Shown piece by piece: positions 414 through 17,589 of a DNA stretch of 64,000 nucleotides. This stretch comes from Guillardia theta CCMP2712. Its lineage: Eukaryota > Protista > Cryptophyta. The notes below the pieces were generated by a model. It was not told the DNA's origin. It was given only the letters and a program-made list of their open reading frames with translations, and made no database searches. The number at the start of each line of letters is the position of its first letter. The stretch's first letter is position 1. Where the stretch lies: assembly GCF_000315625.1 (NCBI RefSeq), contig NW_005434672.1:174698-238697 (forward strand), written 5' to 3'. A program made the position numbers and the translations under genes.

Positions 414-825
414 AACAATTGAGTAAGAATACCTTCATTCGATCATACAGGAAAACACAATGCAACGCTAACGTCACTTTGTGTGTCAGTGTTTCTAACG
501 CATCAGAGCAGTCGATGTCACAGGGAAGGTGAAAATTGGACGATGCGAGAGAAGTCGCAAAATTTGTACTCGAGGCCACACGAAGGACTGGTGGTATTCG
601 ATTCAGTCAGCAGGATGCTTTGACCGTAGTACTCGCACGCGACTGTGCATCCCTTCCTCCAACTTCTTCGCCTTGCAGTCTCGATGTCACTGTCTCAGTC
701 TCAGTCTTCTCTCCATCTCTGTCGTTCCCCGCCATTCGCTTCCTTGGGCTCCTCGCCGAAAAGCATTTTCGCTCCCCCGCTCTCTTCCAAACCCACCCCA
801 CCCACCCCAACAAAAAGTCGAAGGT

Positions 826-852
826 GGGGGGGGGGGGGGGGGGGGGGGGGGG
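826..852 (+). repeat. 27-nt poly-G tract, preceded by C-rich ACCCC repeats (791-808)
   Basis: Read directly from the sequence. Confidence 0.9.
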
Positions 853-3324: not shown

Positions 3325-3627
3325 ACTGTAAAATTTCACGCCTCGTCGCAAGATATTTCTGATGTACTATCATTGTTTTTCTCGACAATTATTTCCACGA
3401 GTAAACAGAGAGAGAGAGCGAAGTCAAATGAGCTTGTACCCCATGAGCCAATAGCGAGCATGTAGTTGAACGAGAAGCTGAAAGATAAGTGTCTTCCAAC
3501 ACGAGGCAGAGATGGATTCAAGAAGAACATGGAAACAAGAAAAATGGCAGGCCGTTGTGATATGCAAGGAAAGCTTGCTGATTGCGGAAGGATTTGGATC
3601 CAGCAGGGAAACGAGGTGAGAAGGGGA

Positions 3628-3653
3628 GGGGGGGGGGGGGGGGGGGGGGGGGG
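3628..3653 (+). repeat. 26-nt poly-G tract
   Basis: Read directly from the sequence. Confidence 0.9.
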
Positions 3654-4379
3654 CAAGATGATTTGGAAGTGCTGCAAGCCTTTAATATTTGTATAGAAGT
3701 TTCATAATGGACAGCAGTTAAGCTCAGGTTTCCAAAGGGGAGCTCATTTCTTCCCTCTGCCTCTTTACTTGAAAATATGCACGAGATCAGGGGGTTGATC
3801 ATGCGGCGGGCGGTTGCGGCGGGATGATCAAGGGGATGGTGGAGGTCGAGGAGGTCAAAGGTGTCTTCCTCGTCGAAGCAGGAGGGTGTGAGACTTGAGC
3901 TCGCAGTTCGGCAGAAAACTCATCAAGAGCAGCAGAGAGTGGGAGAAGAATGCCGCAGGAGGACTGAGGGGTACTAAGATACACGAGGAGATCGAAGAGG
4001 AGCAGGGGCAGGTACTACTGTTGCTGCGGAGAGCGGAAAGGGTAACTCCGCCTCATCGCATTTTAAAACACTGAGGACAGCAACGAGTCGTTTCTCGAAA
4101 TCAGTCGAATCCACTCGAAGATTCTGGATCTCCCAATTCCCCCGGTCATGAACTCATAGCATCCGAAAGACTCTGAAACGCTGTGCCCTGAGAGTATGAC
4201 TGTCAAAGATACACCGATCCATCACAGCTTACAGGGTCATCAGTCACGATCTTCTGGTCTCCGTGACCTCCGTATTCCCCAAGTTCCCCCAATCTCCCCA
4301 ACTTATATTACATAGCCCCCCCAACCTTGCGCACCTCTCCATCCCCAACCTCCAGCACACGCTGCTCTCAGTATAACGA

Positions 4380-4994
4380 ATGTCCTCCACTCAATCCTTC
4401 GATCATCTCGATGCTCTCTTCTTGGAGTACGTTGTCCAGGAGCCTCTGTCCAACCATTTCAGCCTGCCCCTTCCAGTCACTCAGCTGCACAAGTGCGATA
4501 ATGACAGATTCCTGGACTCCGCTTCTACTAGTTTCCTCGACCAAGACTTTGACATCTTTTCAAACGAGGATCTCGTTTTCGAGCACTGCCCTATCATGTT
4601 GCAGTGTGATTTGCCCGAACTTGAGCCTGCAAAACGCGAAGCTGCTGTTGAGTGTGCAGTTAAACCTACTCGTGGACCTCCTGCTGTTTTGAATGTTGTG
4701 CGAGTCCAGTCACGGCAGTCCTTCTTCCAATCCGACAAGCCCGTCGAGATCACCCTCGAGCGCCTTGCCGAGCACTTCCACGAGAGCCTCGAGGTCGCGG
4801 CGGCCAAGATCGGCATCGGCAAGTCGACGATGAAGCTGGTGTGCAGGCAGCTGGGAGTAGAGAAGTGGCCGTACAAGTTCTCAAAGAATCTAGAAGCGAA
4901 GGCCTTGAGACGATCAGAACCAAGACTTTCTACACAATCACGCCATTCGGATTCTTCTGATACGGATGGGAGCATCGATGGCGTGTTTTTGTGA
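4380..4994 (+). CDS. RWP-RK domain transcription factor, intronless subfamily, copy A1
   Basis: ITLERLAEHFHESLEVAAAKIGIGKSTMKLVCRQLGVEKWPY fits the RWP-RK consensus; acidic N-terminus. Confidence 0.88.
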   Translation: MSSTQSFDHLDALFLEYVVQEPLSNHFSLPLPVTQLHKCDNDRFLDSASTSFLDQDFDIFSNEDLVFEHCPIMLQCDLPELEPAKREAAVECAVKPTRGPPAVLNVVRVQSRQSFFQSDKPVEITLERLAEHFHESLEVAAAKIGIGKSTMKLVCRQLGVEKWPYKFSKNLEAKALRRSEPRLSTQSRHSDSSDTDGSIDGVFL

Positions 4995-5689
4995 AAGACT
5001 CGAAAAGTATTTCATAGGTTGAGCCTTGCATTGTATTTTTCCACGATATGTGCAGTTTGTCAATAGAATGTCCTGAAAACACTTTCGAAATAAGCTCAAA
5101 AGAATCATTTTCTTTTCCTCTTCAGCTTGATAATAGATGGGCGCGAATCCAGTTTATTTGACCCAGTTTATTAGGCAGCAAAACTGAAAGCAGCCAGTAT
5201 AGTCGGTAGATTTGCCCTAGCAGCAAAGCCACCGGACTCCCGAGGCTTCGAGTGTGCTTCCAACACCAAACACCGCAGTGACGTCATCAGCGGGAACCCT
5301 CTAAATTTTGCTCTCCCGCAGCTGCTGACCCTTTGTCGAAATAGTCTACCCTCCTGCTGAAAAGCCGTGCAAGTGCTTCGAAAAACTCTCTTCTCCTCTT
5401 CGTGCAAGCTCTCCAAAAAAAACTCTCCTCCTCTTCGCTGGCGTTGAAGCCTGATAAAAACACAAACTTTCCCGATGATCCGTGGATCATGTCAGAGAGC
5501 TGCCCATACAAAATCTTGTACGGATCAAAGAAGGGTATCGCAAGGTCCCAGAGTCCCCTGTTAGCCCGATCTCTTTCCGTACTGCTCGTCGGAAGCTTTC
5601 CTGGCCTTTCAGGAGCTGATTCATCAGACTCTGAGAGCCAGCTAATGTCACTTGATCACTGGCAACATTGACATCATCAGGGCCTCTGC

Positions 5690-6200
5690 CACCCGGGCCG
5701 GAAAACCAAGCCTGAAGCCTGTCGGCACTGCCGTCCAGACTCTCGCCGGGGGGCCGGGCAGTCCGGCGGTTCAACCCGGTGACCGTTGAACGGCGTGCGG
5801 CCGCCCGCAACGGGTGACAGTTCATGATCATGGCATAGGCTGAGGGCCCGGACGCCGTCGGATGAAGCATCCGTGACTCTGTGAATTAAAGAATTCAGTC
5901 CGTCTGTTCCCTTCACAGAGTCACCCGGTGATGTACGCCGGTACTCAGAGTCTGTTCCGAAGTTCTCATTCAACCGGCCGGGCGTTCACGGTGGCACGGT
6001 TGGCCCTCTCAGTCTGCCGGGGGCGGCCAGACTCTGCCGACCGGACCGCGGCACTGCGGCACCCGAGACTCTCGGACCGTACGGTCGCCGCCTGTTCCGA
6101 ACCGTCCGGCCCGCCGGGCCGCGCCCGGCCGCAGGCGCTGTTGGCCCTCTTATTATTTTGAAACCGTGATCGGGTCATCGAGCGATGATCATCGGTGATC
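5690..6200. repeat. GC-rich palindrome-dense intergenic island
   Basis: Dense CCGG/GGCC/GTAC/GATC/GTGAC words, e.g. ACCGTACGGT, CGATGATCATCG; no credible ORF. Confidence 0.6.
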
Positions 6201-6616
6201 GTCACGAGCCCTCCAGCCGTGATTTTACTGAAACGATGCTTGATCCTTCGATTGTTCTTATCACAGCTTCACTTCAGTTCGCAACCTTTGAGTTTCAATT
6301 GCTAGATAACGCAACCTTCTGCTTTCAGGAGCTAACCTTGGTTGTCGAAATAAGCTATTTTCGAAGGAAGGTCACGTCAACAAATTCCGCATCCCTTCAC
6401 CTCAGGATCTATTCCTATGACCACTCTAAGGACGTGGACATACTGAGGCTTTAGGGAAGGGGGACTTCGTGACCTTCGTGACCCCTTCCCTCGCTTCCTT
6501 TCAAGTTCTGGTCTGATCTCTTGAAACGAAATCTTGTCTCGAGCAACCAACCCCGCCACTACTAGTCACAGGTCTTCCCCTTCGAACTGGTTGTTTCTCC
6601 TACGTCTCGTCCAAAG

Positions 6617-7195
6617 ATGGATTTCTCTGAGTCATCCTTTATTGAATACAACAGCATACTGTCGGAGTATTGCTTCGATGATCGTTGTTTCCTGCCGCTC
6701 TCTCACCCTTCAAGACTGCCTATACCAGAGATGGAGGATTTTGTTGCTAGCAATCAGTCATCTACTCTCGAGCAGGATTTGATGAGCGACGAAAATGATA
6801 TCAAGCATGGTTGGCATTCACACAACCTTGCACGAGCTGAAAACTGCTCAGAAAATTATCAAGAAAAGGGCCATCAGCGTCGTGCCTCTTCTTCGGACAA
6901 AACACAAGAAGGAAGAAAGCTGTACGGCACAACACAACACACATTTGCAGTTCGTGTCCAGTCACGGCAGTCCTTCTTCCAATCCGACAAGCCCGTCGAG
7001 ATCACCCTCGAGCGCCTTGCCGAGCACTTCCACGAGAGCCTCGAGGTCGCGGCGGCCAAGATCGGCATCGGCAAGTCGACGATGAAGCTGGTGTGCAGGC
7101 AGCTGGGAGTGGAGAAGTGGCCGTATAAATGCAAAGGAGCTCGAAAGACCAAGGCAGGTCCCAAAAAACTTGTCGGGATGGACTGCATGTTCTGA
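6617..7195 (+). CDS. RWP-RK domain transcription factor, intronless subfamily, copy A2
   Basis: Same RWP-RK peptide as 4380-4994; 6956-7125 matches 4704-4873 at 169/170 nt. Confidence 0.88.
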   Translation: MDFSESSFIEYNSILSEYCFDDRCFLPLSHPSRLPIPEMEDFVASNQSSTLEQDLMSDENDIKHGWHSHNLARAENCSENYQEKGHQRRASSSDKTQEGRKLYGTTQHTFAVRVQSRQSFFQSDKPVEITLERLAEHFHESLEVAAAKIGIGKSTMKLVCRQLGVEKWPYKCKGARKTKAGPKKLVGMDCMF

Positions 7196-7470
7196 TAGCT
7201 GAGGAACATTTCCTTTCAACTTTCACCTTGCTCTTGTATAACAGTAAATTCGCTTTTTGTTTAGCTTGAGTATCATATGATTCAACTTTTGTTTTGTCAA
7301 AGTTTAATTTGCCCATCATGAACCGTGGCAACTTCACTGGCCAGCGAGTCAGGCCCTCGCCGCTGGCAGGCTGGCCCGGCCCGCAGGCCCGGCGCACTGC
7401 CGCCGCGAGCCGCTGTGACAGTGTCGCGGCCTGGTCTTCGAGGCTTCGCCGAGTCGGCCCAGTGGACTTA

Positions 7471-16699: not shown

Positions 16700-17169
16700 A
16701 TGCTCCTCCTCCCCGCAAGAAGACGAGGACAGGACTTCGTTCTCGTCAGCGCCATGATGTAGCTGCTAGGCCACTGTCTTCTGTCCCTCTCCCCGAGGCC
16801 GACTCTCCTCGGCTCTGAGCCCGATCAAGCAGCCCCTGCGGCGCCGTCGTGCCTGATATCCTGCTTCTGATTTTCGAGGACGAAATGGACTCATTGCTCG
16901 AGCCAGCAGCGCTGATACCACAAGAAAATGCCCAGCCACGGCGCGAGTGCCTCAGCCTCGGCTCTCCCGAGAACTGGAAAGCTCGCAGCCAACACCGCAG
17001 AGCAACTTCCAAGCACCAATGCGACAAGCGAGATCGCCCTTGAGCGCCTCGCCGAGCACTTCCACGAGAGCCTCGAGGTCGCAGCGGCCAAGTTCGGCAT
17101 CGGCAAGTCGACGATCATCGGAAGCTGGTGTGCAGGCAACTGGGAGTAGAGAAGTGGCCGTACCATTGA
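16700..17169 (+). pseudogene. RWP-RK pseudogene (third copy of the A cassette) with frameshifts
   Basis: 17017-17163 aligns to the A1/A2 cassette but has a 5-nt deletion after 17029 and a 5-nt insertion at 17116-17120, plus a further 5-nt insertion at 17164-17168. In-frame TGA at 17041-17043. 5' limit uncertain. Confidence 0.8.
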
Positions 17170-17589
17170 AGTTTAGACGGGCCAAGGGCAGTAAGGGAAG
17201 ACATCGAACGGGCCACATTGGAGGCCAGAAGAGTCTTCGACGGGCACGAAGGGGAGCGGATCATCGGATGGTACTCGGTTATCCGGTCAGTGTGTGTTTT
17301 CAAGCCTTGTACGGGACGGTTTCAATAGTCGGAGAAGCCTCGCATATACATTTGATCAAGTTTTCAAGTGCCGTGTGGCCTTGACTTGTATGATGAGCCG
17401 TCCAGCAAGGGCCTTGACGAGTCTTAGACTCTCCGACTGGCTCGGAGATCCGATGATGCCGTACGGTACGGTACTTGGCAGCCTCGACCATCGGACCGGC
17501 GAGCAACTTGAAAGTGAGGCGGGTCGGGTGGAAGGTTTGACTAGCTGTTTGACTAGCCCTTGAGTAACCAGAGGGGCGTTTGAGGGAGG

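What the first reader, a model, noticed from the sequence alone, without database searches (positions are those of the whole stretch)
4704..7125. RWP-RK DNA-binding cassette nearly identical at DNA level between paralogs whose other parts have diverged heavily
Seen: 4704-4873 and 6956-7125 match at 169/170 nt, with the single difference synonymous. Identity stops sharply at the domain edges. The N-termini show only faint protein homology (FLDSASTSFLDQDF vs FVASNQSSTLEQDL; FSLPL vs FLPL) and the C-tails are unrelated. In copy A1, 52 of 57 cassette codons end in G/C, unlike the flanks. Selection on protein cannot preserve synonymous sites. Inference: domain-restricted, GC-biased gene conversion or a copy-paste exon cassette keeps one DNA specificity while the effector regions diversify.
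Basis: partly seen in the sequence, partly recalled or inferred. Interest (0 to 1): 0.85.

Follow-up and report, generated by a model that had tools for sequence, protein, structure and literature searches.

The report
Gene conversion homogenises RWP-RK domain
Two old, neighbouring transcription-factor genes of the alga Guillardia theta share a 170-base stretch encoding their only folded (DNA-binding) domain because local, GC-favouring gene conversion keeps overwriting it. The same happens in many other arrays of this very large gene family, so it is a clear example of a known process, not a new one.

Summary
Window 4704-4873 and 6956-7125 match at 169/170 nt, and the one difference is synonymous. 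The flanks sit at random-level identity. GC3 is 52/57 in both copies.

The genome is the Guillardia theta nuclear genome. The two genes, A1 (4380-4994) and A2 (6617-7195), are small and intronless. They belong to a family with at least 150 RWP-RK domain hits.

Gene conversion is well supported:
- A1 and A2 each have their own Hanusia phi ortholog, and their N-termini reject an A1+A2 clade (p 4e-5).
- The cassette DNA rejects grouping by flank type (p 3e-4 to 3e-9).
- A second locus on contig C12 shows the same mosaic.
- A singleton paralog on C9 has saturated dS (1.6-2.9), so synonymous sites are free to change.
- Independent DNA contigs confirm all four flank-cassette junctions.

At least eight other arrays show domain-only identity, always between genes 1-5 kb apart and with variable tract edges. 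Converted cores have GC3 0.87 against 0.66 elsewhere (p 7e-7), which supports GC bias. The tract coincides with the only confidently folded part of the protein.

A1 is transcribed. A2 looks silent in the runs examined.

The process is of a known kind, seen here in a new family and lineage. First-stage notes of this scan flagged similar RWP-RK arrays on other DNA of this genome. Interest is moderate.

The parts
4380..4994 (+). Gene A1: intronless ORF of 204 aa. It has a disordered N-terminus, the RWP-RK domain, and a 38-aa acidic C-tail of the '...DTDGS...FL' type.
   Evidence: ORF. Pfam PF02042 at residues 124-166, E 7e-15. Transcribed on the + strand: RNA contigs cover 4407-4733 and 4829-5081. 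The C-tail groups with the C12 type I and C9 paralogs (z 6.3 and 6.7). The N-terminus is orthologous to Hanusia P0014 (z 17.2; support 100/99).
4704..4873 (+). Homogenised tract in A1 (codons 109-165). It encodes the folded RWP-RK unit.
   Evidence: 169/170 identical to 6956-7125. GC3 52/57. The AlphaFold confident region is about residues 104-167.
4995..5081 (+). A1 3' UTR, ending at the poly(A) site.
   Evidence: 27 RNA reads carry a poly(A) loose end after 5081, and an RNA contig ends at 5081.
6617..7195 (+). Gene A2: intronless ORF of 192 aa. The database model starts at Met39, giving 154 aa. It has an N-terminus with the 'FLPLSHPSRLPIP' motif, the RWP-RK domain, and a short basic C-tail.
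   Evidence: ORF. Pfam PF02042 E 4e-14. P0008 is the 154-aa version. The N-terminus groups with C12 type II, L007 and L003 (z 11.8, 13.0, 7.9) and with Hanusia P0021 (z 14.9). Its gene-specific flanks are at background depth in the RNA runs.
6956..7125 (+). Homogenised tract in A2.
   Evidence: GC3 52/57. A DNA contig covering 7082-7471 links G at 7111 to A2's own 3' flank.
17016..17163 (+). Third, broken copy of the cassette (89-98% identical in pieces). Its reading frame is disrupted by 5-nt indels. It is the remnant of a type-I-like gene.
   Evidence: L008. The domain is split over two frames. The relative's C12-type gene aligns at 63% to 16760-17260.

Best explanation
A1 and A2 are ancient tandem paralogs in a greatly expanded family of small, intronless RWP-RK transcription-factor genes in the nuclear genome of the cryptophyte Guillardia theta. 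Non-allelic (interlocus) gene conversion between neighbouring family members repeatedly copies the 135-200-nt stretch that encodes the only folded part of the protein: a beta-hairpin plus three helices, ending just after the W-P-Y motif.

The tract stays short because homology ends there. The domain is under strong purifying selection, so paralogs stay similar enough to pair. The flanks encode fast-evolving disordered regions that no longer align, so heteroduplex cannot extend into them. Repair of the heteroduplex favours G/C, which has pushed third positions of converting cores to about 90% GC.

Shown here: the mosaic, the age of the paralogs, the locality, the recurrence and the GC3 excess.
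Inferred: the molecular pathway (homologous recombination with biased mismatch repair), homology limitation as the reason for the sharp edges, and the consequence that the paralogs share one DNA-binding specificity.
For: 1. 169/170 identity with background flanks.
2. The paralogs are older than the Guillardia/Hanusia split. Using N-termini alone, A1 pairs with Hanusia P0014 (z 17.2; 100/99) and A2 with P0021 (z 14.9). An A1+A2 clade is rejected on the flanks, p-AU 3.9e-5.
3. The cassette DNA rejects grouping by flank type: type I as a clade p 3e-4, A1+C12_I p 2.4e-6, A2+C12_II p 3.4e-9. The C12 type I and type II cassettes differ at 2/180 nt and cluster together at 86/87.
4. The singleton C9 paralog keeps the protein (dN 0.05-0.09) but has saturated dS (1.6-2.9) and lower GC3 (41/60).
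5. Between species, cassette dS (0.13-0.16) is similar to flank dS (0.17-0.40), so there is no special synonymous constraint. A1 and A2 differ at 1 site in the 170-nt core, and each differs from the relative's copy at 5.
6. Domain-only identity (98-100%) with near-background flanks recurs in arrays on C5, C10, C12, C50 (three arrays), C2:146k and C147. All such pairs lie 1-5 kb apart, and tract edges vary.
7. Core GC3 is 0.87 at loci with a near-identical partner and 0.66 without (p 7e-7). The same direction holds inside three subfamilies.
8. The tract matches the only confidently folded segment.
9. DNA contigs from two runs join each gene's own flank to the cassette at all four junctions with no mismatch.
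Against: No conversion event has been observed directly. The central 95 nt or so of each cassette cannot be tied to its flanks by the short-k-mer contigs.

The A1+A2 clade is not itself resolved in the 180-nt cassette tree. It is not rejected (p 0.2), and the C2-locus copies form a polytomy.

For the C12 pair, the N-terminal flanks do not formally reject a locus clade (p 0.16).

The GC3 excess could owe something to stronger codon selection at conserved residues. Even loci without a partner show a core-minus-flank GC3 excess of 0.11. I did not polarise substitutions, so the AT-to-GC direction is not shown.

The family sample is incomplete: 87 cores out of at least 150 hits. The 'no partner' class may therefore contain misclassified genes.
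Confidence: 0.85

Rival explanations
1. Direct selection on the nucleotide sequence of the cassette holds synonymous sites fixed. The cause could be an RNA structure, a small-RNA or antisense target, an embedded binding site, or strong codon selection.
For: Cassette GC3 is far above the flanks in the same transcript. Even partnerless cores show a small GC3 excess over their flanks (0.11). At the C12 locus the between-species cassette dS (0.01-0.05) is lower than in the flanks (0.10-0.12), though this rests on only 0.5-2 changes.
Against: The C9 singleton encodes nearly the same protein with saturated dS (1.6-2.9). Different arrays carry different, locus-specific synonymous variants. At the C2 locus the cassette dS between species equals the flank dS. 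The RNA fold is no better than shuffles (z -0.51). Near-identity is strictly local, within 5 kb or less, which sequence-level selection would not predict.
Confidence: 0.05
2. The identity comes from one or a few non-homologous domain-shuffling events. A ready-made cassette was inserted into unrelated genes, either as an exon or by retro-copy, and homology-driven conversion played no part.
For: Edges are sharp and flanks are unrelated. An environmental contig carries an A2-type N-terminus joined to an A1-type tail through the cassette.
Against: Both ORFs are continuous, with no introns at the edges. The codons just outside the tract encode the same residues with different third bases, so the recipient already had a homologous domain. 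Both flank types have Hanusia orthologs that already carry the domain. Tract edges vary from array to array.
Confidence: 0.05
3. The identity is an assembly artefact. Two more divergent cassettes were collapsed to one consensus, or flanks were mis-joined.
For: The cassette is multi-copy. Its k-mer depth is 6-14 times that of the flanks, and short-read contigs break inside it.
Against: DNA contigs from run X1 and from an independent 2011 run X2 extend 24-45 nt from each gene-specific flank into the cassette with zero mismatches. They carry the copy-specific base (A at 4859, G at 7111). The same pattern recurs in many arrays and in a relative's contigs. At 170 nt the repeat is shorter than a Sanger read, and this genome was, as I recall, assembled from Sanger reads.
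Confidence: 0.03
4. A1 and A2 are very recent tandem duplicates whose flanks diverged extremely fast.
For: They lie 2.25 kb apart on the same strand. The flanks do evolve fast (dN/dS about 0.4-0.8 between species).
Against: Each N-terminus has its own Hanusia ortholog. The flank data reject an A1+A2 clade (p 3.9e-5). A1's tail groups with paralogs on other contigs.
Confidence: 0.02

Closest known systems
Non-allelic (interlocus) gene conversion and concerted evolution of tandem paralogs. Classic cases recalled from general knowledge: the human G-gamma/A-gamma globin genes, opsin genes and MHC genes.
   Same: A short, sharply bounded tract of near identity sits inside otherwise diverged neighbouring paralogs. 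The tract tree conflicts with the flank tree. The effect depends on proximity.
   Different: Here the tract coincides with a whole small DNA-binding domain, flanked on both sides within one exon by unalignable disordered coding sequence. It also recurs in many arrays of a single family with at least 150 domain hits.
GC-biased gene conversion in multigene families and genomes. The survey by Pessia et al. 2012 (PMC5635611) covered only the Guillardia theta nucleomorph. Histone and Hsp70 examples are recalled from memory.
   Same: Third-position GC is raised specifically where conversion acts. Here it is 0.87 against 0.66.
   Different: The signal here is in the cryptophyte nuclear genome and at the scale of a 130-200-nt tract. 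The direction of substitution was not polarised.
Concerted evolution of DNA-binding domains in clustered transcription-factor genes, for example the DUX homeobox macrosatellites (PMC13558733, abstract seen) and the PRDM9 zinc-finger arrays (PMC2794550).
   Same: A tandemly arrayed transcription-factor family has its DNA-binding part homogenised by recombination.
   Different: DUX arrays homogenise whole repeat units, and PRDM9 homogenises repeats within a single gene. Here only the domain is homogenised, between separate genes with unrelated remainders.
Minimal RWP-RK proteins: MID of volvocine algae (PMC4086717) and the plant RKD class (from general knowledge).
   Same: The proteins are small, with a single C-terminal RWP-RK domain and little else that folds.
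   Different: No orthology was shown. The motif here is K-W-P-Y-K, not R-W-P-x-R-K. The family has at least 150 domain hits, not one or a few genes. No link to mating type is known.

Membership tests
RWP-RK domain proteins (Pfam PF02042) | The domain profile matches above Pfam's gathering score. | tested here: met
   A1 scores 55.1 bits and A2 52.6 bits, against a cut-off of 29.3.
RWP-RK domain proteins (Pfam PF02042) | The name-giving R-W-P-x-R-K motif. | tested here: inconclusive
   W-P is invariant in the family alignment. In A1/A2 the motif reads E-K-W-P-Y-K-(F/C): Lys replaces the first Arg and the R-K pair is absent. Other G. theta subfamilies read R-W-P-Y/F/H-(R/K)-(K/R/Q).
RWP-RK domain proteins (Pfam PF02042) | Sequence-specific DNA binding. 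| not testable with these tools
   No solved structure matches by sequence. Binding needs DAP-seq, PBM or EMSA.
Interlocus gene conversion / concerted evolution | A bounded tract of near identity within otherwise diverged paralogs. | tested here: met
   169/170 identity, with flanks at 0.48 and 0.50 against a background of 0.50 +/- 0.03.
Interlocus gene conversion / concerted evolution | The tract phylogeny conflicts with the flank phylogeny. | tested here: met
   The cassette rejects type clades (p 3e-4 to 3e-9). The flanks reject A1+A2 (p 3.9e-5).
Interlocus gene conversion / concerted evolution | The duplication predates the divergence of the tract, shown by orthologs of each paralog in an outgroup. 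| tested here: met
   Hanusia P0014 is the A1-type ortholog and P0021 the A2-type ortholog.
Interlocus gene conversion / concerted evolution | Synonymous sites are free to change where conversion does not act. | tested here: met
   The C9 singleton has dS 1.6-2.9 with dN 0.05-0.09. Cassette dS between species is 0.13-0.16, similar to the flanks.
Interlocus gene conversion / concerted evolution | Direct observation of conversion events, for example as polymorphism or in tetrads. | not testable with these tools
   No population or cross data were available to me.
GC-biased gene conversion | GC3 is raised in converted tracts relative to the flanks and to non-converting relatives. | tested here: met
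   0.87 against 0.66 per locus (p 7e-7). Core minus flank is 0.24 against 0.11 (p 0.001). Within subfamilies: 0.81/0.63, 0.93/0.80 and 0.83/0.71.
GC-biased gene conversion | An excess of AT-to-GC over GC-to-AT substitutions, polarised with an outgroup. | not tested
   Only protein sequences were available for Hanusia, and the relative's contigs give too few changes.

The most novel reading that the evidence does not exclude
On this reading the conserved cassette is more than a passive island of homology. It works as a recombination linker that lets this family shuffle N-terminal and C-terminal effector modules between genes, with silent copies such as A2 serving as reservoirs.

Three hints point this way. 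An environmental relative carries a gene with an A2-type N-terminus and an A1-type tail and 3' UTR, joined inside the cassette. A1 itself combines a unique N-terminus with a type-I tail. A2 is intact but apparently untranscribed.

The hybrid could equally be a metagenome-assembler chimera formed through the shared repeat.
Probability: 0.12. Interest if true: 0.65.

Novelty: new member of a known kind. Interest (0 to 1): 0.4.

Why it matters
This is an unusually clean natural example of how purifying selection on a small domain and homologous recombination reinforce each other. The domain stays similar, so it keeps converting, so it stays identical, while the disordered remainder of each gene drifts freely.

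It also gives tract-scale evidence for GC-biased conversion in a cryptophyte nuclear genome. In addition, it documents a very large expansion of small RWP-RK genes, apparently confined to the Guillardia/Hanusia lineage. My searches of the held open-access literature found no description of it.

There is a practical consequence. Domain-based trees of this family will group genes by chromosomal neighbourhood and not by ancestry. Short-read transcriptome and metagenome assemblies will break inside the cassette or form chimeras there.

Tried and rejected
RNA structure in the cassette: folding energy is no better than shuffles (z -0.51).

Solved structures by sequence: nothing below E 0.1.

The GC-rich stretch between A1 and A2 (5640-6160) as a repeated element or recombination hotspot: it is unique in the genome and only weakly palindromic. 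I dropped it.

Downstream collinearity of the hybrid contig L031 with A1's downstream region: nothing aligns past A1's 3' UTR, so this is uninformative.

A second homology search with A2, to find non-hybrid A2-type genes in the relative: no new proteins.

Literature: searches for RWP-RK with Guillardia, with cryptophyte and with gene conversion found no prior description. The G. theta genome paper is not in the held library, so the Sanger origin of the assembly is from my memory only.

Full report
THE OBSERVATION. In register (offset 2252 nt), window 4704-4873 and 6956-7125 are identical at 169 of 170 positions. The single difference is 4859 A versus 7111 G (GTA/GTG, Val), which is synonymous. 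A 29-mer from the tract occurs three times in the window against none expected.

The tracts lie in two continuous ORFs on the + strand: A1 (4380-4994, 204 aa) and A2 (6617-7195, 192 aa). Both hit Pfam RWP-RK above threshold.

The edges are sharp in an informative way. The two codons before the tract (Val-Arg) and the two after it (Tyr-Lys) encode the same residues in both genes but differ at their third bases. Beyond them the DNA is at background identity: 0.48 upstream and 0.50 downstream, against 0.50 +/- 0.03 for unrelated pairs. The N-termini share only faint protein similarity (z 4.7) and the C-tails none (z -0.1).

WHERE THIS IS. Paralogs of A1 are annotated as GUITHDRAFT proteins of Guillardia theta CCMP2712, and the assembly is 87 Mb in 669 contigs. 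So this is the nuclear genome of that cryptophyte alga.

The cassette has at least 33 DNA-level matches (81-100% identity), mostly in tandem clusters. The Pfam RWP-RK profile finds at least 150 domain hits above the cut-off among 571 first-look candidates. Most lie in small ORFs. In a 5.8-billion-protein collection, the A1/A2 subfamily appears only in Guillardia, its relative Hanusia phi and a few environmental contigs.

IS IT GENE CONVERSION? Four independent lines say yes.

First, the paralogs are old. Using N-terminal regions only, A1 pairs with Hanusia P0014 (z 17.2, all others 2.9 or less) and A2 with Hanusia P0021 (z 14.9). In a tree of the N-termini, A1+P0014 has 100/99 support and A2 groups with its relatives. 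An A1+A2 clade is rejected, p-AU 3.9e-5.

Second, the cassette tells the opposite story. A1's C-tail resembles the tails of a gene on contig C12 and one on C9 (z 6.3 and 6.7). A2's N-terminus resembles a different C12 gene (z 11.8). Yet the two C12 genes, one of each flank type, differ at only 2/180 cassette positions, and A1/A2 at 5/180 counting the edge codons. Same-type genes at different loci differ at 11-15 positions. The cassette alignment rejects type I as a clade (p 3e-4), A1+C12-I (p 2.4e-6) and A2+C12-II (p 3.4e-9). It places all C12 copies together (86/87).

Third, synonymous sites are not constrained in themselves. The singleton paralog on C9 keeps almost the same protein (dN 0.05-0.09), but its dS against every other copy is saturated (1.6-2.9). 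Two ENA contigs from related organisms carry the locus-specific cassette variants. They give a cassette dS of 0.13-0.16 at this locus, much like the flanks (0.17-0.40). Flank dN/dS is 0.4-0.8. A1 and A2 differ at one site in the 170-nt core, while each differs from the relative's copy at five. The last homogenisation therefore probably came after that split.

Fourth, the assembly is sound where it can be checked. Contigs from a DNA run and from an independent 2011 run extend from each gene's own flank 24-45 nt into the cassette at all four junctions. They show no mismatch and include the copy-specific base. The central 95 nt or so cannot be linked by such short k-mers.

HOW GENERAL, AND WHY DOMAIN-RESTRICTED. 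I fetched 70 loci of the family and extracted 87 complete 42-codon cores. Cores that are 98-100% identical, with flanks at or near background, recur in arrays on C5, C10, C12, C50 (three arrays), C2:146-149k and C147. These belong to different RWP-RK subfamilies. Every such pair lies 1-5 kb apart.

Same-subfamily copies 30 kb or more apart, or on other contigs, are only 86-95% identical. Some arrays (C2:281-291k, C14, C3, C19) are whole-unit duplicates instead.

Tract ends are not fixed. The 5' edge ranges from 10 to more than 73 nt upstream of the core, the 3' edge from about 7 nt before the end of the core to 13 nt past it, and tract lengths from 135 to over 200 nt. That argues against an exon-like or site-specific cassette and for homology-limited conversion.

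An AlphaFold model of A1 is confident only for residues about 104-167: two strands and three helices, with pLDDT 91-93 over 121-160. The rest sits near pLDDT 50. So the tract is essentially the folded unit, including a beta-hairpin upstream of the Pfam model. My inference is that selection keeps the domain similar enough to pair, while the disordered flanks have drifted beyond the reach of heteroduplex extension.

GC BIAS. Core GC3 averages 0.87 at 16 loci with a near-identical partner and 0.66 at 36 loci without one (p 7e-7). The core-minus-flank excess is 0.24 against 0.11 (p 0.001). Other genes in the window have GC3 of 0.53-0.65.

The contrast holds within each of the three subfamilies that contain both classes: 0.81/0.63, 0.93/0.80 and 0.83/0.71. 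Tandem arrays without near-identity have low GC3 (0.48-0.56). This is the expected footprint of GC-biased conversion. I did not polarise substitutions, and some contribution from codon selection at conserved residues cannot be excluded.

RIVALS. An RNA-level constraint is unlikely: the fold z-score is -0.51, and the dS results above argue against it. Recent duplication is rejected by the Hanusia orthologs. Non-homologous domain insertion does not fit the homologous codons just outside the tract, the lack of introns, or the variable edges. Assembly collapse is unlikely for the reasons given above.

EXPRESSION. A1 is transcribed on the + strand and has a poly(A) site at about 5081. RNA contigs cover its N-terminal coding region and its tail at depths hundreds of times the intergenic background.

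The reads lying on A2's cassette come from the paralog L003 at C2:148k. They carry 7112 G>C (Glu to Gln, 40 of 40 reads), and their upstream loose ends match L003's own flank. A2's gene-specific flanks are at background depth. A2 is therefore silent or very low in these runs, although its ORF is intact.

A LEAD NOT RESOLVED. One ENA contig (L031) encodes a protein with an A2-type N-terminus and an A1-type C-tail and 3' UTR. The switch falls inside the cassette: the 5' edge codons are A2-like and the 3' edge codons A1-like. It may be a true unequal-crossover product or an assembler chimera formed through the shared repeat.

Its divergence from G. theta (75-83%) is greater than that of the companion contig L032 (94%). 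The two may come from different organisms.

Three Hanusia transcript models all stop at the same cassette position. This suggests the cassette is shared at DNA level between paralogs in that species too.

COMPARISON AND VERDICT. This is interlocus gene conversion with GC bias, a well-known process. It is seen here in a family and lineage for which I found no prior description in the held literature. The survey of GC-biased conversion that lists G. theta used only its nucleomorph.

First-stage notes of this scan had already flagged RWP-RK arrays and cassette-like homogenisation on other pieces of this genome. I treated them as leads only.

I rate it a new member of a known kind and of moderate interest.

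Noticed in passing
window 16760-17260 (cassette remnant 17016-17163): A third RWP-RK copy is broken by 5-nt indels, and its domain is split over two reading frames. The surrounding sequence aligns at 63% to a C12-type gene, so it is a decayed type-I-like family member that still carries cassette pieces 89-98% identical to A1.
   Followed up: partly
L031:359-1000 (ENA ERZ930064, contig k127_120883): A hybrid gene in an environmental relative joins an A2-type N-terminus and upstream region to an A1-type C-tail and 3' UTR inside the cassette. It is either an unequal-crossover product or an assembler chimera.
   Followed up: partly
Hanusia phi proteins P0014, P0021, P0022: Three transcript models orthologous to A1, A2 and L003 all end at the same cassette residue ('...HESLE'). 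This looks like a de Bruijn assembly break at sequence shared between paralogs in that species as well.
   Followed up: no
window 6617-7195 versus 4380-5081: A1 is strongly transcribed, while A2's gene-specific parts are at background depth in two RNA data sets. Reads over A2's cassette derive from the paralog at C2:148690 (L003).
   Followed up: partly
whole genome G000: There are at least 150 RWP-RK domain hits above the Pfam cut-off (571 first-look candidates), mostly small ORFs in tandem or inverted arrays. I found no description of this expansion in the held literature.
   Followed up: partly
window 5640-6160 and 7330-7470: GC-rich stretches (0.62-0.69 GC) with weak inverted repeats flank A2. 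The larger one is unique in the genome.
   Followed up: partly
window 821-852 and 3622-3655: There are two long poly-G runs of about 30 nt upstream of A1.
   Followed up: no
L026-L029 (C16:206618-208720) and L030 (C10:977159-977389): In these family members the RWP-RK domain is split into two ORF pieces about 60 nt or more apart, between '...KI' and 'GIGKST...'. This probably marks an intron inside the domain, unlike in A1/A2.
   Followed up: no
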